Virus record (IMG/VR): IMGVR_UViG_3300042934_000594
Location: 1-64,000 of that record
DNA length: 64,000 bases
Strand: one strand, 5' to 3'
In this document: piece after piece, positions 4,836-54,463 of the stretch
Numbering within the stretch: the first letter of the stretch is position 1
Layout: every line of letters begins with the position of its first letter
The notes under the pieces: generated by a model
What the model saw: the letters and a program-made list of their open reading frames with translations, nothing else
Databases searched by the model: none
Told to the model about the DNA's origin: nothing
Program-made: the position numbers and the translations under genes

Positions 4836-5084
4836 ATGAACTACGTACTGCTGTTAACCGTGTTGTTTTGTGTGGGCTTTCGAATCCGACGCATCTACGA
4901 CGAGGCCCAGTCTTATCGCCTGGCCTGGGGCATCAGTTGGAAAACCTCACTGCGTTACCACGTCGAATGGGATCGGCATATTGCCCGCACCATTGGTACG
5001 GCGGTAGCGATCATCGTCATTTATGCCCTGGTGTGGGGGACGGTCAACTACGGTTGCCTGTTCCTCAAGGGTGTGGCCTGCTGA
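4836..5084 (+). CDS. hypothetical membrane protein
   Basis: AAGGAG RBS; two hydrophobic segments. Confidence 0.7.
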   Translation: MNYVLLLTVLFCVGFRIRRIYDEAQSYRLAWGISWKTSLRYHVEWDRHIARTIGTAVAIIVIYALVWGTVNYGCLFLKGVAC

Positions 5085-5133
5085 AAAACACTGGCTTGTC
5101 AAAGCTATGTAACTCATCCCAAGGAATATCCCC

Positions 5134-5982
5134 ATGTCTAACTCGTTCAATGACGTGCTCAGCGTTGCTGACAGCATCTCCATCGCCCTGGATCCACGCA
5201 ACACGCATGGCTCGTATCGCGCCAGTATTACCTGCGGTGCTAGCACGCTGTCCACGCGCTATGCCCCTGAAAAGGGTGAAGGTGTACTGGCGGCGTTCGT
5301 CAAGACGCTGAACCTGTCGATGTCCGACATCGATCAGCACGCAGACGGTGCCCCCGGCGAGTTCGCAGAACGTCTGCAACAGGTGCGTATCTTTGAGATC
5401 GACACCAGCAAGGAATTCCAGTTCCCGAACCTGCCGTTCGACGGCACCGACAGCGAAACCCTGTTCAAGAACGCACGCAGCGTAAACTGGGCGTGGAATC
5501 AGCTGATCGTTGACGAGAAGCCGGTGACCGAGCTGACCTGTTCGGTGTCGTTGGGTGCTGTGACGGAAAGCGTGTCGATCACCCCTGAAGGTCCGCGCAT
5601 GGCCAACATGGTGTCCACCCTGGTGACCTGCCTGAACAACCTGCTCAAGCGTATCACCCTGGTCAAAGGTGAAATCCGTCCCAAGCTCAACAGCGGCGGC
5701 GTGATGACCACCAGCGAAGAACTGTTGAATCAGGCGTTGAGCATTGACTACAGCTTCGTCGAACAGCGCGACCGCAGTTTCGCGGTGATGTGCTCCGTCG
5801 ACCTGCTGTTCTGGGGCCGTGGTCGCAGTGTGGCCGTGGTGGGTAATCGTACTGAAGCGATGGCTGAAGCATTGGAAGAGTGCCTGGTGGCACTGTCCTT
5901 TGACTTTGCAGAAGCCGCGGCCGGTACCGAGATGGCCATCTCTGAAATCCTCAAGACGCGCAAGGCTGCCGAGGAGGCGTAA
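5134..5982 (+). CDS. hypothetical protein with three internal alpha-beta-beta-beta-alpha repeats
   Basis: Repeats such as SETLFKNARSVNW / SEELLNQALSIDY and TCSVSL / MCSVDL; strongly C-ending codons. Confidence 0.75.
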   Translation: MSNSFNDVLSVADSISIALDPRNTHGSYRASITCGASTLSTRYAPEKGEGVLAAFVKTLNLSMSDIDQHADGAPGEFAERLQQVRIFEIDTSKEFQFPNLPFDGTDSETLFKNARSVNWAWNQLIVDEKPVTELTCSVSLGAVTESVSITPEGPRMANMVSTLVTCLNNLLKRITLVKGEIRPKLNSGGVMTTSEELLNQALSIDYSFVEQRDRSFAVMCSVDLLFWGRGRSVAVVGNRTEAMAEALEECLVALSFDFAEAAAGTEMAISEILKTRKAAEEA

Positions 5983-6224
5983 TGAGCGAGCCGACCAAGG
6001 CTAACATCGGGGCGTCAATGCCCCCTGTTAAAGACACCACCACCAAGGTCATGCAGATTGACCCAGACGATGTCAACCCTGCACAAACGGCTGAGCGGGC
6101 ACACGCCGAGGGCTTTGCGGTGCGTGACACCAACGGCGAACTGGTGGACGAAGAAAACTTCCGTCACCTCAAGCCCAACTTCGTACCGGTACATATCGAC
6201 TTGATTGAACCTAAGGACAGCTAA
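5982..6224 (+). CDS. hypothetical protein
   Basis: TAATG overlap, GGAGG RBS. Confidence 0.7.
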   Translation: MSEPTKANIGASMPPVKDTTTKVMQIDPDDVNPAQTAERAHAEGFAVRDTNGELVDEENFRHLKPNFVPVHIDLIEPKDS

Positions 6225-6225
6225 C

Positions 6226-6564
6226 GTGGGATACGAGGTTGATGCAAAGTGTGCCTCGTGGTCCCTCACCGAACACGGCCGCGGTAAACGCGCGGTCGTG
6301 GTACGGACAGGGTGTTACGTGGTGGAACACATCTCAACGGGTAAGTTCATTGTGGCGTGCAGTAAGAATGTCACCGAAGAGGTCGACCTCACCATTCACC
6401 ACCTGTTGCAAGGTACGAGCAAGAATAAGGCGTTCAACCGGTTGGTTGCCACTGAGCCTGACTTGCGTCTGCTGGAGTACGCAACCCGTACGCTGGTCGA
6501 TGCCCGTAAGCTTGAAGCGGCGATTCGAAAGACGGTGACGCCTCGGTATTTACTCCTCAACTGA
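6226..6564 (+). CDS. degenerate GIY-YIG-like protein
   Basis: TGCYVVEHISTGKFIVACSKNV resembles the GIY...YIGSSxN hairpin; GTG start after AAGGA. Confidence 0.5.
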   Translation: MGYEVDAKCASWSLTEHGRGKRAVVVRTGCYVVEHISTGKFIVACSKNVTEEVDLTIHHLLQGTSKNKAFNRLVATEPDLRLLEYATRTLVDARKLEAAIRKTVTPRYLLLN

Positions 6565-6633
6565 GAAACTACTGGTGCAGGTAATACTGTGCTAGTAGTC
6601 CGCTAGTGTTTGTCCCACTACAGGAGCCCCAGC

Positions 6634-6855
6634 ATGAACGATAGTCCGCGTGGGCTGATAGGCGATAAGGGTGACGAAGGAGCCAGGGGTCCTATCATCC
6701 CTCCCGAGGAATGGGCAGCGATTATGTCAGACGTTGCCAAGGAGCGACCGCCGGCACCCCGTAGCCGGTTGAGCTACCAGATCCCTTTTGCGATCAGCGC
6801 GTTGATTCTATTGTTCACGGTGGTGCTCCATTACTTTCCAATAAGGAATTTGTGA
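6634..6855 (+). CDS. hypothetical protein, C-terminal TM helix
   Basis: AGGAG RBS; hydrophobic C-terminus. Confidence 0.65.
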   Translation: MNDSPRGLIGDKGDEGARGPIIPPEEWAAIMSDVAKERPPAPRSRLSYQIPFAISALILLFTVVLHYFPIRNL

Positions 6856-24541: not shown

Positions 24542-24568
24542 AAGAATACTGGCGGTAGTATGGTATAC
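24541..24568 (+). promoter_or_regulatory. bipartite promoter of tRNA operon (AAAGAATACTG-N8-ATGGTATAC)
   Basis: Both boxes and the spacer length are identical at 25672-25699; upstream box resembles phiKZ middle-promoter AAanntTAC. Confidence 0.65.
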
Positions 24569-24590: not shown

Positions 24591-24675
24591 GGAGAGGTTC
24601 CCGAGCGGTCAAAGGGAGGGGACTGTAAATCCCCCGTCGTGTACTTCGAAGGTTCGAATCCTTCCCTCTCCACCA
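24591..24675 (+). tRNA. trnY: tRNA-Tyr(GTA)
   Basis: Full cloverleaf: GGAGAGG/CCTCTCC acceptor, gggga-CTGTAAA-tcccc, long variable arm, TTCGAAT, encoded CCA. Confidence 0.95.
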
Positions 24676-24681
24676 TTTCAT

Positions 24682-24760
24682 TGGGGCATAGCCAAGTCTG
24701 GCCTAAGGCAACAGGTTTTGATCCTGTCATTCGTTGGTTCGAATCCAACTGCCCTTACCA
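24682..24760 (+). tRNA. trnQ: tRNA-Gln(TTG), weak 1:72 and 2:71 pairs
   Basis: acagg-TTTTGAT-cctgt, gttgg-TTCGAAT-ccaac, encoded CCA; U1.U72 mismatch. Confidence 0.88.
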
Positions 24761-24765
24761 TTTAC

Positions 24766-24852
24766 GACCCTTTGCCATTGCCCGCGCTTGCCTATGTGCG
24801 AACAGCGCAGGAGGCGTCGCATTAACCCAGCGGTACGTCCGCTGGGAGGGTC
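24766..24852 (+). ncRNA. structured spacer RNA S1 (three-way junction)
   Basis: gaccct/agggtc closing helix stacked on perfect cccagcgg/ccgctggg helix plus an irregular gcct..tgcg/cgca..aggc hairpin. Confidence 0.45.
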
Positions 24853-24860
24853 ACCCTTGT

Positions 24861-25019
24861 TTGAAGCGTTGAGAGCGAGTGGTGGAACATGGTATACGTG
24901 GGGGATAGCATCCCCTAGTCGGGGAATATAGACTCCGGCCGCCTGTCCGTTGGTGCCTTCGTGGTTTGCGGGTTCGAACCCCGCCTCAGAGAGAACGGAT
25001 CATATTCTCAACGCTTCAA
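24861..25019 (+). ncRNA. tRNA-like RNA L1 (Leu-type D-arm and T-arm, rebuilt anticodon and acceptor domains)
   Basis: Perfect 14-bp terminal helix ttgaagcgttgaga/tctcaacgcttcaa; TGGTGGAAcaTGGTATAC D-arm; gcggg-TTCGAAC-cccgc T-arm; no 7-nt anticodon loop, no CCA. Confidence 0.7.
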
Positions 25020-25026
25020 CTTTTTA

Positions 25027-25103
25027 GACGCCGTAGCTCAGTTGGTTAGAGCACTAGCCTGTCACGCTAGGGGTCGAGGGTTCGAGTCCCTTCGGTGTCG
25101 CCA
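25027..25103 (+). tRNA. trnD: tRNA-Asp(GTC)
   Basis: GACGCCG/CGGTGTC acceptor, ctagc-CTGTCAC-gctag, TTCGAGT, encoded CCA. Confidence 0.95.
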
Positions 25104-25107
25104 TATT

Positions 25108-25191
25108 CAACGTAGGGAGAACTAGGGATCATACCCCTAGCCAGTTACTCATGAACTGGTCGCTTAGTCAGGTATAAAGCAATCTACGTTG
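25108..25191 (+). ncRNA. structured spacer RNA S2 (four-way junction with two 7-nt-loop hairpins)
   Basis: caacgtag/ctacgttg closing helix; ctaggg-ATCATAC-ccctag; ccagtt-ACTCATG-aactgg; gctt-11nt-aagc. Confidence 0.6.
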
Positions 25192-25203
25192 TCTTAGTTT
25201 CAT

Positions 25204-25279
25204 TCCATGATAGCTCAGTTGGTAGAGCAACGGACTGTTAATTCGTTGGTCCCTGGTTCGAGTCCAGGTCATGGAGCCA
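25204..25279 (+). tRNA. trnN: tRNA-Asn(GTT)
   Basis: TCCATGA/TCATGGA acceptor, acgga-CTGTTAA-ttcgt, TTCGAGT, encoded CCA. Confidence 0.95.
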
Positions 25280-25283
25280 CATT

Positions 25284-25313
25284 CATACGGCCTCCCGCAA
25301 GGGAGGCTTTATG
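25284..25313 (+). terminator. GCCTCCC-family hairpin closing the tRNA operon
   Basis: gcctccc-gcaa-gggaggc-tttatg. Confidence 0.7.
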
Positions 25314-25339
25314 TCGGATCTGTATTTAAGGAGTGGAGT

Positions 25340-25660
25340 ATGCTGTCAGTTCGCCTGGATAAAGAGTGTGACGAGTACCTGCGAAAATTGGCAGACCTCG
25401 AAGACCGCTCCATCAACAACCTGATCAAGCGCATGATCCTGGAGCATAAGCGTTACAACCCACTGGCTGAGGACGGTGGCATCCTACAGCTGGAACGGGG
25501 CGTCAAGCATGCGTTCATGATTGTCTTGGACGGTAAGGTCGTAGGGACACTCAACCGCGGTCCTGGTGGGTTACTGGCCTTGGAGCTGGACACTACTAAC
25601 CTAGGTTCTCCTGTGCCACATTGGTCTAAAGACCTGCCAAGCGGTGCTGTGACGGACTGA
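25340..25660 (+). CDS. ribbon-helix-helix (Arc/CopG-like) DNA-binding protein
   Basis: MLSVRLDKECDEYLRKLADLEDRSINNLIKRMI RHH pattern; AAGGAG RBS. Confidence 0.75.
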   Translation: MLSVRLDKECDEYLRKLADLEDRSINNLIKRMILEHKRYNPLAEDGGILQLERGVKHAFMIVLDGKVVGTLNRGPGGLLALELDTTNLGSPVPHWSKDLPSGAVTD

Positions 25661-25671
25661 CCTGGTTACTG

Positions 25672-25699
25672 AAAGAATACTGACCAGGTCATGGTATAC
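25672..25699 (+). promoter_or_regulatory. second copy of bipartite promoter (AAAGAATACTG-N8-ATGGTATAC)
   Basis: Identical boxes and spacing to 24541-24568; ends 18 nt upstream of L2. Confidence 0.65.
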
Positions 25700-25716: not shown

Positions 25717-25823
25717 CCCTGGGTAGCTCAGTTGGTTAGAGCGTTGCCGTTGTGAGAGTCCGTTAGTCCGGGTGCTTTTGCAGCAGTGAAGGCCGATGGT
25801 TCAAATCCATCCCTCGGGGCCTA
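25717..25823 (+). ncRNA. tRNA-like RNA L2 (intact D/T arms, expanded anticodon domain, CCTA end)
   Basis: ccctggg/cctcggg acceptor with one mismatch; TAGCTCAGTTGGTTAGAGC D-arm; gatgg-TTCAAAT-ccatc T-arm; about 30 extra nt between the arms; own promoter and terminator. Confidence 0.7.
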
Positions 25824-25839
25824 TTTTGTGAATTATACA

Positions 25840-25864
25840 GCCTCCTTCACGGGAGGCTTTATAT
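25840..25864 (+). terminator. GCCTCC-family hairpin
   Basis: gcctcc-ttcacg-ggaggc-tttat directly after L2. Confidence 0.65.
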
Positions 25865-52236: not shown

Positions 52237-52372
52237 GACCTGGGCTTCCAAAAGGGTTGTGAAAAATAACTAACGTTACTTCTATGCGCAGTTATTGGTT
52301 AATATTTATGGATTGACTGTAGTTAACGCTCATAACATCGAGTTGCTTTGCTCCAAACCTGGGAGATACACA

Positions 52373-54463
52373 ATGGGTACCACGAACGCCTCTCCAAAGA
52401 TTGTCTTTGGGGGTATCGACGATCAGTCCCGGCGGCCGCTCGCGCGTCCCGCTGTGACTTTCGCGCAACACGCCCCGCTGCTCCGTCTGTTTGCTCAGAC
52501 CGGGCCTGAGACCACTGAATGGGTGGGCACCGAATCTGGTGGTTTCGCTTCACTCTACGGTGCGCTGACCCTGGCCCGTCGTGGTCAGTATTACAACCTT
52601 CAGTCGATGCTGGCTGAAAAGCTCCTGGGTGAGGGTAACGGCTTTGCAGTCAAACGCCTGATTCCAGACGATGCGCCTGCACCTGCGCGCATCATCATCG
52701 CACTCGAGCTGGTGCGTGACGCCATCCCTGCCACGACCGTGGCGCTGTCTGGGTTTGACTACCCGGAAGATGTGGCTGACGTCAGCGGTAATACCGCTCA
52801 AGCTCAAGCCGTCGGCGACACCGTCAATGGCCTGCGTGCTCGCATCATCACCATCCAGGACAACCAGTCGGGCGTGGGTAAGCAACGCGTTCTGCCAGGT
52901 ACTCTGGTGGCTGAATCCGATTCGACTCAGTCGATGGTTTACCCGCTGTTCGAATTGCCGGCTTCTTTTGTCGGCAGTGGCGGTAACCTGCTCGGCTGGC
53001 GCGCATGGGCGCCCACCACGCAAGACGACATCGGTTTCGACGAAACCACCGCTGCTCAGTTCAAGACCCGCATGTACCGCATGCAGTTCTTGCAGCGTGC
53101 CACCAGCTCGGCTTCCCCGGCTGTGGTCAAGACTGCCCTGGGTGACGACTACGTTGACGTCTGCTTCACTGAAGGCGCCTACAGCGAGTCCACTGACAAA
53201 GAATACTACATCGGCCAGACGCTTGTTCAAGCGTACAAGGACGACGGTTTGGACAGCGGCCTGGCGCCCCTGTACTCCCCGTTCGAAAAGATCTACGTCT
53301 ATAAGGACAACATCAAAACTGTCCAGGACCTGATCTACGAAGTAGAGCTGGAAGTCAACCCGGCTGCTCAGGCCCTGATCGCGGCCCCTGGCCAGATCGA
53401 TTTCCTGACCGGTACCGGTATCGACGGCGACCTGTACCAGGGCATCCTGTTCGAAGGTCCGCTCAACGGCGGCATCAAGCTGGGTGACCAGACCACTGTT
53501 TATGCAGTGGGTGGCGGTGACGGTACCACCGACCTCGCCATGTACGAGAAGTTGGTCAACCTGGAAAACGACAACTTCGGTCAGCTCAAAGACCAGTACG
53601 AAAACTTGGCGGTCTTCCCGTTCACTCGTCTGTACGACACTGGCCTGTCCATGGACGGCAAGTATCGCATGATGGGTGTGCTGGGCAAGCGTCAGGACCT
53701 GATGCTGACCTTCACCACGTACGTGGAAGCAGAAGGTGTGGCACCGACGGCGTCTGAAGAGCTGTCCCGTGCGCAAGCCCTGACCACGCGTCTGAAGGCG
53801 TTCCCTGAGTCGACGCTGTATGGCACTCCAGTGTGCCGTGCTGAAATCATCATGCAAACCGGTTACCTGGCAGGCGGTGGTTACACCAAGCCTGTGCCAC
53901 AGGTCATCGACTACGCCGTACGTTGGGCTCGCTTCGGCGGTGCTGGCAGCGGCAAGATGCGTGAAGGCTTCGACATCGACGTCAGCCCGAACAACCGTGT
54001 GACTGAGATCAAAGACCACAACGTCAAGTATTTCAACGCACGGGCGCAATCCAACGCCTGGGTCAACGGTGGTTCGTACTCGTTGTCTTACGACAACCGC
54101 AGCATGTACTACCCGGCGATCCACACCGTCTACAACGACGACACCTCGGTGTTGACCTCGCCGATCACCACGTCGATCTGCTGCGACCTGATGCGCCTGT
54201 CGCGTCTGGTACACGCTGATTTCTCCGGTAACGCCAAGCTGACCGATGAGCAATTCATCGAGCGCTGCGATGCGCGCCTGCTGGCTCTGGTGGACGGTCG
54301 TTACAACGGTCGTGTGGACCTGGTACCCACCACGTACTTCACCGCTGATGACAAGAACAATGGCTTCAGCTGGCACGTGAAGTGGGAAGTCCGTGCGAGC
54401 GTGCCTCGTACCGTGATGTACCTGGACATCATCACCGAACGTCGGGACTCCGTTGCGGCGTAA
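52373..54463 (+). CDS. tail sheath protein (phiKZ gp29-like)
   Basis: NA.PKIVFGGIDD.S, QH.PL, YDTG; 696 aa upstream of tube gene. Confidence 0.88.
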   Translation: MGTTNASPKIVFGGIDDQSRRPLARPAVTFAQHAPLLRLFAQTGPETTEWVGTESGGFASLYGALTLARRGQYYNLQSMLAEKLLGEGNGFAVKRLIPDDAPAPARIIIALELVRDAIPATTVALSGFDYPEDVADVSGNTAQAQAVGDTVNGLRARIITIQDNQSGVGKQRVLPGTLVAESDSTQSMVYPLFELPASFVGSGGNLLGWRAWAPTTQDDIGFDETTAAQFKTRMYRMQFLQRATSSASPAVVKTALGDDYVDVCFTEGAYSESTDKEYYIGQTLVQAYKDDGLDSGLAPLYSPFEKIYVYKDNIKTVQDLIYEVELEVNPAAQALIAAPGQIDFLTGTGIDGDLYQGILFEGPLNGGIKLGDQTTVYAVGGGDGTTDLAMYEKLVNLENDNFGQLKDQYENLAVFPFTRLYDTGLSMDGKYRMMGVLGKRQDLMLTFTTYVEAEGVAPTASEELSRAQALTTRLKAFPESTLYGTPVCRAEIIMQTGYLAGGGYTKPVPQVIDYAVRWARFGGAGSGKMREGFDIDVSPNNRVTEIKDHNVKYFNARAQSNAWVNGGSYSLSYDNRSMYYPAIHTVYNDDTSVLTSPITTSICCDLMRLSRLVHADFSGNAKLTDEQFIERCDARLLALVDGRYNGRVDLVPTTYFTADDKNNGFSWHVKWEVRASVPRTVMYLDIITERRDSVAA

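What the first reader, a model, noticed from the sequence alone, without database searches (positions are those of the whole stretch)
24861..25019. L1: tRNA-Leu-like core inside a 14-bp clamp, with rebuilt arms and a possible pseudoknot
A perfect 14-bp helix (24861-24874/25006-25019) closes a core with a Leu-type D-arm (TG-GTGGAA-caTGGTATAC) and a canonical T-arm (gcggg-TTCGAAC-cccgc). The anticodon position holds a 7-bp stem with a 5-nt TAGCA loop, followed by two extra hairpins (gtcgggg/ctccggc; cgcc/ggtg). The loop GTCCGTT (24945-24951) is complementary to AACGGAT (24994-25000) in a 19-nt bulge of the acceptor arm. There is no CCA. New perfect helices are not expected from simple decay. GTCCGTT also occurs in L2 and is the exact complement of AACGGAC in tRNA-Asn, which may be chance.
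Basis: partly seen in the sequence, partly recalled or inferred. Interest (0 to 1): 0.85.

Follow-up and report, generated by a model that had tools for sequence, protein, structure and literature searches.

The report
Clamped tRNA-Leu relic in phage operon
A giant phage carries, in the middle of its tRNA gene cluster, a 159-base leftover of a leucine tRNA gene that can no longer decode and whose two ends are locked in a perfect 14-base-pair helix; it probably gives a stable tRNA-like RNA of unknown use, much like the long-known small RNAs of phage T4, and no second copy exists anywhere to test this.

Summary
The sequence features are all present, but only two exceed chance. One is the perfect 14-bp helix 24861-24874/25006-25019, the only one of its kind in the window. 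The other is descent from a tRNA-Leu: a Leu-type D arm, and a variable arm, T arm and 3' acceptor about 71% identical to tRNA-Leu(UAA) of related jumbo phages.

The interior without the clamp folds no better than shuffled sequence (z +0.31). The GUCCGUU/AACGGAU match is at chance level (P 0.08-0.17), and in the energy model it is a nested helix that competes with the cloverleaf, not a pseudoknot.

L1 is not a tRNA. It gets no Rfam or ARAGORN call, keeps 3 acceptor pairs, has a 5-nt loop, carries a 38-nt insert and lacks CCA.

It lies in a phiKZ-like phage (IMG/VR contig, 269 kb), inside a Tyr-Gln-L1-Asp-X-Asn operon with a clade-conserved promoter motif.

No homologue turned up in IMG/VR, JGI metagenomes, GTDB genomes or related phages. 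The phage itself has no close relative there, so covariation cannot be tested.

Best reading: a transcribed, non-decoding, end-clamped tRNA-like stable RNA, analogous to T4 species 1 RNA. An inert relic is nearly as likely. Interest is moderate to low.

The parts
24545..24568 (+). Promoter-like motif AATACT-N10-TGGTATAC in front of the tRNA operon that contains L1
   Evidence: It occurs only twice in the window, against 0.01 expected. The second copy, 25676-25699, precedes L2. The same motif precedes tRNA clusters in Noxifer, RVTF4, L002, L004, L006 and L053.
24591..24760 (+). tRNA-Tyr(GUA) and tRNA-Gln(UUG), both with encoded CCA, upstream in the same operon
   Evidence: ARAGORN and Rfam at 54.6 and 54.2 bits.
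24766..24852 (+). Structured spacer closed by GACCCU/AGGGUC, between tRNA-Gln and L1
   Evidence: MFE fold of 24758-25026.
24861..24874 (+). 5' arm of the 14-bp clamp (P1)
   Evidence: Perfect inverted repeat I8, pairing probability about 1.0.
24877..24879 (+). GAG, the residual 5' acceptor strand, able to pair with CUC at 24985-24987
   Evidence: Read from the sequence. Probability about 0 in the energy model.
24880..24899 (+). Leu-type D arm (UG-GUG-GAACAUGGUAUA-CGU) with the G18 G19 equivalents
   Evidence: Alignment with tRNA-Leu genes of relatives. The stem has two G.U pairs and is not predicted by the energy model.
24899..24917 (+). Hairpin at the anticodon position: 7-bp stem with a 5-nt loop UAGCA, so no 7-nt anticodon loop
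   Evidence: Probability 0.95-0.98 for the five inner pairs.
24918..24955 (+). 38-nt insert relative to tRNA-Leu: hairpin GUCGGGG/CUCCGGC (24918-24939) and weak hairpin CGCC/GGUG (24940-24955). It contains GUCCGUU at 24945-24951.
   Evidence: It is a gap in the alignment with tRNA-Leu. Hairpin probabilities are 0.97 and 0.09. The Leu model aligns the first hairpin as a second D-arm-like element.
24954..24967 (+). Remnant of the tRNA-Leu variable arm (UGCCUUCGUGGUUU)
   Evidence: It aligns with CGCCUUCGGGAUUG of Psa21 tRNA-Leu(UAA).
24968..24984 (+). Canonical T arm GCGGG-UUCGAAC-CCCGC
   Evidence: It is the best-matching part in every model search.
24985..25005 (+). CUC (residual 3' acceptor strand) followed by the 18-nt internal loop, which contains AACGGAU at 24994-25000
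   Evidence: Read from the sequence. The P3 helix with 24945-24951 has probability about 0.8 but is at chance level.
25006..25019 (+). 3' arm of the clamp (P1)
25020..25026 (+). CUUUUUA, the 7-nt spacer to tRNA-Asp. It contains no CCA.
   Evidence: Read from the sequence. tRNA-Asp starts at 25027.

Best explanation
L1 is a lineage-specific, non-decoding descendant of a phage tRNA-Leu (UAA-type) gene. It is retained inside the tRNA operon of a phiKZ-like jumbo phage.

**Shown**
- The core descends from tRNA-Leu.
- Everything needed for decoding or charging is gone. The acceptor stem is down to 3 bp, there is no free 3' end or CCA, the loop is 5 nt where 7 are needed, and a 38-nt insert sits between the anticodon stem and the variable arm.
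- A perfect 14-15 bp helix joins the two flanks.
- L1 lies 100 nt after tRNA-Gln and 7 nt before tRNA-Asp, downstream of a promoter motif conserved in this phage clade.

**Inferred**
- L1 is transcribed with the tRNAs.
- RNase P cutting at the 5' end of tRNA-Asp, and an endonuclease cutting in the U-rich stretch before the clamp, release an RNA of about 160 nt.
- Its ends are buried in the clamp, so it resists exonucleases and accumulates as a stable RNA.
- It can be neither charged nor used by the ribosome.
- The intact T arm and the GG-bearing D loop could still form a tRNA elbow.

My best guess is a 'closed tRNA mimic': a stable RNA that occupies or titrates a factor which recognises tRNA shape. 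Candidates are a processing or modification enzyme, or a host tRNA-targeting defence nuclease. It would be the counterpart of T4 species 1 and 2 RNAs and of the permuted tRNA-like RNAs conserved in this phage clade.
For: **Origin**
- Searches give the similarity of the D arm, variable arm, T arm and 3' acceptor strand to tRNA-Leu(UAA) of Psa21, D6, RVTF4 and L126.

**Not a tRNA**
- ARAGORN makes no call.
- Rfam gives no tRNA match even at E up to 10 on the element alone.
- The Leu model gives 18.5 bits, against 36-54 bits for the four true non-Leu tRNAs next to it.

**Clamp**
- It is unique, perfect and has probability about 1.0.
- The whole element has z -2.86.

**Operon context**
- The promoter motif occurs twice in the window against 0.01 expected and is conserved in relatives.
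- Genuine tRNAs with CCA lie on both sides.

**Precedent in the clade**
- Clamp-closed permuted tRNA-like elements are present in the window and five or more relatives.
- Compensatory changes occur in 5 of the 9 predicted T and D arm pairs.
- Other non-decoding tRNA-likes with short or expanded anticodon arms occur at L2, L053, Noxifer, L009, L010 and L026.

**Precedent elsewhere**
- T4 species 1 RNA is 139 nt and lies in the tRNA cluster. It has a canonical T arm near its 3' end and paired ends.
- Its role is still unknown (PMC3014915, PMC9697503).
Against: - No homologue was found anywhere I could search, so there is no covariation and no evidence of purifying selection.
- The interior is no more structured than shuffled sequence.
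- The energy model disfavours the cloverleaf by 12-14 kcal/mol, so an elbow is not assured.
- No partner protein is evident nearby.
- A perfect clamp could be a young mutational product, such as a template switch at the quasi-palindrome formed by the acceptor stem, rather than a selected feature.
- Expression and processing are inferred, not observed.
Confidence: 0.45

Rival explanations
1. L1 is an inert relic: a dead tRNA-Leu gene that is still co-transcribed but does nothing. The insert, the shortened loop and the broken acceptor stem are decay. The perfect clamp is a recent mutational accident, for example a template-switch copy of one flank onto the other starting from the acceptor-stem palindrome, and has simply not yet had time to degrade.
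For: - L1 is an orphan in all searches.
- In Noxifer, tRNA-Tyr and tRNA-Asp are 3 nt apart, so Gln, the spacer and L1 are dispensable at this site.
- The interior has z +0.31.
- P3 is at chance level.
- L1 scores lower on the Leu model than non-cognate tRNAs do.
Against: - The T arm and the D loop GG are still perfect although four other parts of the molecule are altered.
- A 14/14 helix that exactly brackets the element has a low prior probability.
- The same operon and the clade keep other closed, non-decoding tRNA-likes under selection.
- The phage has no close relative in the collections, so orphan status says little.
Confidence: 0.35
2. L1 is a punctuation element of the precursor transcript. 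The clamp would be a double-strand RNase (RNase III) site, or, together with the following C-U5 run, a partial terminator or attenuator. It would split the operon into Tyr-Gln and Asp-X-Asn halves, and the tRNA-derived core would be only the filling of the hairpin.
For: - The 14-15 bp perfect duplex is followed after one base by UUUUU.
- All three non-tRNA spacers of the operon are closed by their own end-to-end helix.
- T4 species 1 RNA is a classical RNase III substrate in vitro (my own knowledge, not checked here).
Against: - The terminator scan does not report it. The 'loop' is 131 nt, and the stem has 6 G-C pairs out of 14, unlike the GC-rich GGGAGGC-type terminators after tRNA-Asn and L2.
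- tRNA-Asp and tRNA-Asn downstream have no promoter motif of their own, so strong termination would silence them.
- 14 bp is short for RNase III.
- This reading does not explain why the T arm and D loop are kept.
Confidence: 0.12
3. L1 is a Y RNA: a partner of a Ro60/Rsr protein, with the clamp as the Ro-binding stem and the tRNA-like domain as the effector module. The D-to-T order and the short 'anticodon' loop would match D. radiodurans Yrn1.
For: - The architecture resembles Yrn1 as described in PMC4201824. That paper describes terminal stem pairing, a tRNA-like domain whose T and D arm order relative to the 5' end differs from YrlA, and a 5-bp 'anticodon' stem with a shortened loop.
Against: - Rfam Y RNA and YrlA models give nothing on L1 alone.
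- The weak YrlA hits in the region span two adjacent elements, which is the dimeric-tRNA artefact that PMC4201824 warns about.
- The clamp is a perfect helix without the bulged Ro-binding motif.
- No TROVE-domain protein appears among the large ORFs of the window scanned with Pfam.
Confidence: 0.03
4. L1 is a functional decoding tRNA whose inserts are removed after transcription.
For: The T arm and D arm are intact. A 7-nt loop AUAGCAU with U33 and A37 equivalents can be drawn if the innermost A-U pair is opened (read from the sequence).
Against: - No splicing system is known in bacteria for a 38-nt insert at the junction of anticodon stem and variable arm, or for an 18-nt insert in the acceptor strand.
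- Removing the 38-nt insert in silico still gives no ARAGORN call, even at very relaxed thresholds.
- There is no CCA, and the acceptor stem has 3 bp.
Confidence: 0.02

Closest known systems
T4 species 1 and species 2 small stable RNAs (annotated rnaC and rnaD in NC_000866) of the T4 tRNA cluster
   Same: - They lie in a phage tRNA gene cluster and are co-transcribed with tRNAs.
- They are 119-139 nt long, against 159 nt for L1.
- Species 1 has a canonical T arm (CCGGG-UUCGAAU-CCCGG) close to its 3' end, its two ends pair, and long extra hairpins stand where the D and anticodon arms would be.
- They do not decode.
- Their function is still unknown (PMC3014915, PMC9697503).
   Different: - There is no sequence or structural homology beyond the T arm.
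- The terminal pairing in T4 is short and interrupted, whereas L1 has a perfect 14-bp clamp.
- L1 keeps a recognisable Leu-type D arm and variable arm, so its parent tRNA can still be named.
- The T4 RNAs are conserved among T-even phages (my own knowledge), whereas L1 is an orphan.
Bacterial Y RNAs with a tRNA-like domain: D. radiodurans Yrn1 and YrlA (Rfam RF02553)
   Same: - The terminal stem is made of the 5' and 3' ends, and a tRNA-like module is attached to it.
- PMC4201824 describes Yrn1 as having a T/D order relative to the 5' end that differs from YrlA, and a 5-bp 'anticodon' stem with a 6-nt loop.
- They are not aminoacylated.
   Different: - There is no Rfam match.
- There is no Ro-binding motif in the stem.
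- No Ro60/TROVE gene was found in the window.
- YrlA has the permuted order T arm, acceptor hairpin, D arm. That order fits the neighbouring element at 25108-25191, not L1.
tRNA-Leu(UAA) genes of related jumbo phages (Psa21, D6, RVTF4, IMG/VR contigs L126, L140, L089)
   Same: - The D arm sequence type is the same.
- The variable arm GCCUUCG..., the T arm and the start of the 3' acceptor strand match, about 71% over nt 94-131.
   Different: - L1 has a 5-nt loop instead of CUUAAAC.
- It has a 38-nt insert, 3 acceptor pairs instead of 7, and an internal loop of 2 nt on one strand and 18 nt on the other.
- It has the 14-bp clamp and no CCA.
- It scores 18.5 bits on the Leu model.
Permuted, clamp-closed tRNA-like elements of the same phage clade (window 25108-25191; L004, L006, L007, L002, Psa21, L126)
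   Same: - These are closed tRNA-shaped modules without a free acceptor end.
- They are embedded in the same tRNA operons.
   Different: - They are closed at the anticodon side, with the T arm before the D arm.
- They are conserved across the clade and covary.
- L1 is closed at the acceptor side, has the D arm before the T arm, and is found in this phage only.

Membership tests
tRNA (Rfam RF00005 / ARAGORN) | Score at or above the family threshold (29 bits), or an ARAGORN call | tested here: not met
   There is no tRNA hit on L1 at the gathering threshold, nor at E up to 10 on 24840-25026 alone. ARAGORN at default settings finds nothing. Only at an 80% threshold does it force a poor 'tRNA-Asp' onto 24911-24993.
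tRNA | A 7-bp acceptor stem with a free 3' end carrying or accepting CCA | tested here: not met
   Only GAG/CUC can pair. It is followed by a 2/18-nt internal loop and the clamp. There is no CCA, whereas all four neighbouring tRNAs encode CCA.
tRNA | A 5-bp anticodon stem with a 7-nt loop (U33, purine 37) | tested here: not met
   The stem is 7 bp and the loop is the 5-nt UAGCA, with probability 0.95-0.98 for the inner pairs. A 7-nt loop requires opening an A-U pair.
tRNA | A T arm with 5 bp and a UUCRANN loop | tested here: met
   GCGGG-UUCGAAC-CCCGC at 24968-24984.
tRNA | A D/T elbow (G18 G19 contacting the T loop) | not testable with these tools
   The GG is present in the D loop, but the D stem is not predicted by the energy model. 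This needs probing or a solved structure.
tRNA-Leu of related jumbo phages (model R2) | A full-length match to the family model at the level of true tRNAs | tested here: inconclusive
   The score is 18.5 bits, E 0.011 for the window (3e-5 on the element alone). It is carried by the variable arm and T arm, with the anticodon arm skipped. True tRNAs of other specificities score 36-54 bits. This supports descent, not membership.
Y RNA / YrlA | A match to the Rfam models | tested here: not met
   There is no hit on L1 alone. The hit at 24966-25052 (20.8 bits against a threshold of 69) joins the L1 T arm to the tRNA-Asp D arm and is an artefact.
Y RNA / YrlA | An adjacent Ro60/Rsr (TROVE) gene | tested here: not met
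   Pfam scans of 20 ORFs of the window found no TROVE domain. These ORFs included those of 424 aa or more that I judged coding, with the exception of the + strand ORF 52295-54463. The remaining 205 kb of the genome was not available.
Intrinsic terminator | A GC-rich hairpin with a 3-8 nt loop directly followed by a U run | tested here: not met
   The scan does not list it. The arms are 131 nt apart. A U5 run does follow, one base after the 3' arm.
tmRNA | An ARAGORN tmRNA call or a tag reading frame | tested here: not met
   ARAGORN finds no tmRNA in the window, and none with -m at a relaxed threshold.
MITE / insertion element | Terminal inverted repeats, a target-site duplication and multiple copies | tested here: not met
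   A 14-bp terminal inverted repeat is present. The flanks CTTGT and CTTTT are not a duplication. There is no second copy in the window or in the collections.
Phage tRNA-cluster stable RNAs (T4 species 1 type) | Lies in a tRNA operon, is non-decoding, is T-arm-bearing, and accumulates as a discrete stable RNA | tested here: inconclusive
   Location, the T arm and paired ends are met. Accumulation as a stable RNA cannot be tested here. There is no homology to the T4 RNAs, so this is an analogy, not a family assignment.

The most novel reading that the evidence does not exclude
L1 is a working 'closed tRNA mimic' of a nucleus-forming jumbo phage. It would be a tRNA-Leu body whose ends are sealed by a clamp, so that it cannot be charged, cleaved at the anticodon or degraded from its ends. 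It would titrate a factor that reads tRNA shape, for instance a host tRNA-targeting defence nuclease or a processing or modification enzyme. It would then belong to a wider set of non-decoding tRNA-like RNAs in this clade's tRNA operons: the permuted YrlA-type modules, L2-type RNAs with expanded anticodon arms, and tRNA-likes fused to structured RNAs of about 250 nt.
Probability: 0.2. Interest if true: 0.7.

Novelty: new variant of a known kind. Interest (0 to 1): 0.35.

Why it matters
Small stable RNAs in phage tRNA clusters have been known since the T4 era, and their role is still unexplained. L1 is a case in which the parent tRNA, Leu(UAA-type), can still be read. The steps from tRNA to non-decoding RNA are therefore visible: loss of the loop, an insert, loss of the acceptor stem and sealing of the ends.

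If L1 is functional, it would add to the evidence that jumbo phages use tRNA mimicry beyond decoding, and it would give a simple construct for pull-down and decoy tests.

If L1 is a relic, it shows how tRNA genes decay in phage operons. It also cautions against reading perfect helices in G+C-rich sequence as evidence of selection.

The more robust lead lies beside L1: the clade-wide, covarying, permuted tRNA-like elements.

Tried and rejected
**Searches for homologues, all negative**
1. An exact 21-mer in IMG/VR found only the window's own contig.
2. A D-arm...T-arm pattern in IMG/VR and JGI metagenomes found only promoters in front of ordinary tRNAs and unrelated expanded Leu-type tRNA-likes.
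3. A GTCCGTT...T-arm...AACGGA pattern found only self in IMG/VR, and 9 unrelated loci in GTDB genomes.
4. blastn against GenBank phages matched only T arms.
5. A single-sequence covariance model of L1 was run against 26 loci of relatives, the window and T4. It gave only partial matches, to the variable arm, T arm and 3' acceptor strand of tRNA-Leu genes or to T arms alone.
6. Relatives were sought through the upstream 235-aa protein and through the NAD ligase. The best neighbour-protein identity is 43-52%, so no close relative exists in these collections.
7. A promoter-motif scan of IMG/VR was too unspecific.

**Hypotheses tested and dropped**
- Homology of L1 to the Noxifer Asp-Asn spacer, which shares AGCGAGTGGTG and CATCCC-TAGTC-GGG. 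The alignment score is within the shuffle range and the region has z +0.52.
- Origin of the 38-nt insert by internal tandem duplication of the D and anticodon arms (38 nt each). This is not significant, P about 0.23.
- A GTCCGTT link to tRNA-Asn and L2. The heptamer is at background frequency.
- A reading on the minus strand. It is less stable (-54.5 kcal/mol), and all neighbours are on the + strand.
- YrlA, tmRNA, terminator and MITE assignments. See the membership table.
- Coding potential. Only short ORFs without support cross L1.

**Functional clues from neighbouring proteins: none**
- The hits were an RHH-domain protein, lectin-fold virion proteins, ribonucleotide reductase and a ligase.
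Full report
**Where the window comes from.** The window is the first 64 kb of IMG/VR contig IMGVR_UViG_3300042934_000594, which is 269,430 bp long. Its large virion protein (DUF7193) is about 50% identical to those of PhiPA3, PA1C, Psa21, Noxifer and other phiKZ-like jumbo phages. It also encodes an NAD-dependent ligase and a ribonucleotide reductase. No close relative exists in the collections. The protein just upstream of the tRNA cluster has its best homologues at 43-52% identity, and the ligase finds only itself in IMG/VR.

**The operon.** ARAGORN and Rfam find tRNA-Tyr (24591-24675), tRNA-Gln (24682-24760), tRNA-Asp (25027-25103) and tRNA-Asn (25204-25279). The motif AATACT-N10-TGGTATAC occurs twice in the window, against 0.01 expected. 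One copy lies before tRNA-Tyr and the other before L2. The same motif precedes tRNA clusters in Noxifer, RVTF4 and four metagenomic relatives. In 201phi2-1 a tRNA-Leu is transcribed from a middle promoter (PMC11512511). A GC-rich hairpin with a U-rich tail follows tRNA-Asn at about 25290-25315. I saw it by eye; one search does not list it. L1 therefore lies inside a Tyr-Gln-L1-Asp-X-Asn transcription unit, 100 nt after tRNA-Gln and 7 nt before tRNA-Asp. All four true tRNAs encode CCA, and L1 and L2 do not. In Noxifer, tRNA-Tyr and tRNA-Asp are 3 nt apart. Gln, the spacer and L1 are thus an addition in this lineage or a loss in Noxifer.

**Checking the observation.** Two details need correcting: the 3' 'bulge' is 18 nt rather than 19, and one of the seven GTCCGTT/AACGGAT pairs is G.U. 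The 14-bp clamp is perfect. It is the only perfect inverted repeat of at least 14 nt with separate arms within 250 nt in the window, and neither arm recurs. The full element folds at -64.5 kcal/mol with z -2.86. The 131-nt interior alone folds at -44.5 kcal/mol against -45.8 +/- 4.3 for shuffles, z +0.31. The surplus structure is therefore the clamp. The interior helices are what a sequence of about 55-60% G+C gives by chance. The 7-bp complementarity has shuffle P of 0.08-0.17. GTCCGTT occurs 8 times in the window against 10.6 expected.

**Which fold.** In the ViennaRNA ensemble the pairing probabilities are:
- clamp, about 1.0
- anticodon-position hairpin, 0.95-0.98
- first insert hairpin, 0.97
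- T stem, 0.8-0.9
- GUCCGUU/AACGGAU, about 0.8

In this ensemble GUCCGUU/AACGGAU forms as an ordinary nested helix that encloses the variable-arm remnant and the T arm. GGUG of the D stem pairs with CGCC of the insert (0.7). The cloverleaf D stem, the GAG/CUC acceptor pairs and the second insert hairpin have probabilities of about 0, 0 and 0.09. The 'pseudoknot' is a pseudoknot only if the cloverleaf is assumed. Thermodynamics prefers a two-domain fold, but tertiary contacts of a tRNA elbow are not modelled, so this remains open.

**What it descends from.** Local alignment and MAFFT show that nt 94-131 match tRNA-Leu(UAA) of Psa21 at 27 of 38 positions. This stretch comprises UGCCUUCGUGGUUU, the T arm and CUCAG. 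The D arm UGGUGGAACAUGGUAUAC is of the Leu type seen in RVTF4, Psa21 and D6. My single-sequence model of L1 finds the variable-arm, T-arm and 3'-acceptor segment of tRNA-Leu(UAA) genes in RVTF4, L126, D6 and Psa21, plus other partial matches to T arms, but no full-length homologue. A model built from ten tRNA-Leu genes of relatives hits L1 at 18.5 bits, E 0.011 for the window. It skips the anticodon arm and uses the first insert hairpin as the D arm. The four true tRNAs, none of them Leu, score 36-54 bits on the same model.

L1 is therefore a tRNA-Leu descendant but no longer a tRNA. Relative to the parent it has:
- a 5-nt loop
- a 38-nt insert between the anticodon stem and the variable arm
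- an acceptor stem cut to 3 bp
- an internal loop of 2 nt on one strand and 18 nt on the other
- the clamp

Removing the insert in silico does not restore an ARAGORN call. The insert has the same length as the D and anticodon arms together, but a tandem-duplication origin is not statistically supported.

**Homologue search.** All attempts failed:
- an exact word in IMG/VR
- two degenerate structural patterns in IMG/VR, JGI metagenomes and GTDB genomes
- blastn against GenBank phages
- the L1 model on loci of relatives, the window and T4

The phage has no close relative in these collections, so this absence neither supports nor refutes function. It does mean that no covariation test is possible.

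**Context that bears on function.** The operon and its relatives are rich in non-decoding tRNA-shaped RNAs.

- *Permuted, clamp-closed element.* Between tRNA-Asp and tRNA-Asn lies an 84-nt element at 25108-25191. It runs clamp, T-arm-like hairpin, acceptor-like hairpin, D arm, clamp. Elements with this order are present in L002, L004, L006, L007, Psa21 and L126. Compensatory changes occur in 5 of the 9 predicted T and D arm pairs, and by eye also in the clamp and the acceptor hairpin. This is the order of YrlA-type Y RNAs (PMC4201824). Rfam YrlA does not reach threshold, and the weak YrlA hits in the region span neighbouring tRNAs, which is the dimeric-tRNA artefact that paper mentions.
- *L2 type.* L2 has its own promoter motif and terminator. 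It is a tRNA body with 42 nt in place of the anticodon loop. Noxifer has a similar element.
- *tRNA-likes fused to longer RNAs.* L053 and L006 carry tRNA-likes with closed anticodon loops fused to a conserved RNA of about 250 nt.

Closed tRNA mimics are thus a recurring and partly selected feature of this clade. That raises the prior that L1 is used.

**Known analogues.** T4 encodes two small stable RNAs at the end of its tRNA cluster. Species 1 is 139 nt long. It has a canonical T arm near its 3' end, paired ends and long extra hairpins, with z -4.57. Their roles are unknown (PMC3014915, PMC9697503). L1 shares only the T arm with species 1, so this is an analogy and not homology. D. radiodurans Yrn1 is described as having a T/D order relative to the 5' end that differs from YrlA, and a 5-bp 'anticodon' stem with a 6-nt loop (PMC4201824). 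But L1 has no Rfam Y RNA match, and no TROVE protein was found in the window.

**Verdict.** The origin is well supported (about 0.8): a tRNA-Leu(UAA-type) gene remodelled into a non-decoding element sealed at its ends and sitting in a tRNA operon.

For function I commit, at 0.45, to a stable tRNA-like RNA released from the precursor. Its 3' end would be defined by RNase P cutting at tRNA-Asp, and its ends would be protected by the clamp. It would act as a closed tRNA mimic. The processing steps and the mimicry are inferred, not shown.

The alternatives are:
- an inert relic with a young clamp, 0.35
- a processing or attenuation punctuation element, 0.12
- a Y RNA, 0.03
- a spliced decoding tRNA, 0.02

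The finding is real but modest. The clamp and the tRNA-Leu ancestry do.

Noticed in passing
window 25108-25191; also L004 7355-7448, L007 3717-3810, L006 3841-3938, L002 6928-7000 and 7005-7066, L012 (Psa21) 4990-5058 and 5064-5125, L126 7094-7162 (-): A family of permuted, clamp-closed tRNA-like RNAs is conserved across this jumbo-phage clade, sometimes in tandem. The order is closing stem, T arm, acceptor-like hairpin, D arm, closing stem, which is the YrlA-type order. The T and D arms covary, with compensatory changes in 5 of 9 pairs. By eye the clamp (GAGAG/CUCUC against GAGGG/CCCUC) and the acceptor hairpin covary too. It is below the Rfam YrlA threshold, and no Ro60 gene was seen. This is a stronger lead than L1.
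   Followed up: partly
window 25717-25819 (L2), promoter motif 25676-25699, terminator-like 25844-25856; Noxifer L014 about 5258-5355: L2 is a separate transcription unit. It is a tRNA body with good acceptor, D and T arms, 42 nt in place of the anticodon loop, and CCU instead of CCA. Noxifer has a comparable tRNA-like with a 23-nt 'anticodon loop' and CCA. Both contain CCGUUAG.
   Followed up: partly
L011 (RVTF4) 5680-6520; L002 7780-8370; L012 (Psa21) 5823-6643; L013 (D6) about 5030-5730; L140 about 790-1540: A non-coding region of about 600-850 nt lies next to the tRNA-Trp/Ser/Leu genes, with stretches shared by several relatives. No Rfam family matches it. It may be a large structured RNA.
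   Followed up: no
L053 2585-2900 and 3165-3560; L006 4217-4480: These are repeated units. Each is a tRNA-like with a closed or extended anticodon arm (for example CCGG-CUUAG-CCGG) directly followed by a conserved region of about 250 nt (...GAACTAAAACGAGGCG...GGGTAATCAG...). It is unannotated and was not tested against Rfam with relaxed thresholds.
   Followed up: no
window 24545-24568 and 25676-25699; relatives L002, L004, L006, L011, L014, L053: The motif AATACT-N10-T(G/A)GTATAC precedes tRNA clusters throughout the clade and is probably their promoter. Its 3' half, CATGGTATACG, is also present as an exact 11-mer in the D loop of L1 (24888-24898), without the AATACT half. This may be a coincidence, because Leu D loops read UGGUAUAC.
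   Followed up: partly
window 24591-25279 and tRNA clusters of L002, L006, L012, L013, L014, L053, L126: The tRNA sets of this clade are dominated by the GUN-anticodon (queuosine-family) tRNAs Tyr, Asp, Asn and His. That would fit replacement of host tRNAs hit by an anticodon nuclease of that specificity. This is speculation and was not tested.
   Followed up: no
window 24766-24852: The 100-nt spacer between tRNA-Gln and L1 folds into its own closed module: GACCCU/AGGGUC closing two hairpins, one of them an 8-bp hairpin CCCAGCGG/CCGCUGGG. All three non-tRNA segments of the operon are closed end to end.
   Followed up: partly
L009 331-432 (-), L010 6353-6464 (-) and about 6232-6302 (-), L026 about 1150-1250: Unrelated viral contigs carry expanded Leu-type tRNA-likes with odd anticodon arms. 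In L010 these have 9-bp acceptor stems, and ARAGORN does not call them.
   Followed up: no
window 25340-25660: The small ORF between tRNA-Asn and L2 has an N-terminal ribbon-helix-helix (CopG-type) domain (Pfam RHH_1, E 7.6e-5). It may be a regulator or an antitoxin-like protein.
   Followed up: no
L004 6908-7072, L007 3385-3549, L006 3669-3836, L053 3008-3168: A 54-55 aa ORF (MKVK...CRCC...) embedded in the tRNA clusters is conserved in relatives. It is absent from the window's cluster.
   Followed up: no
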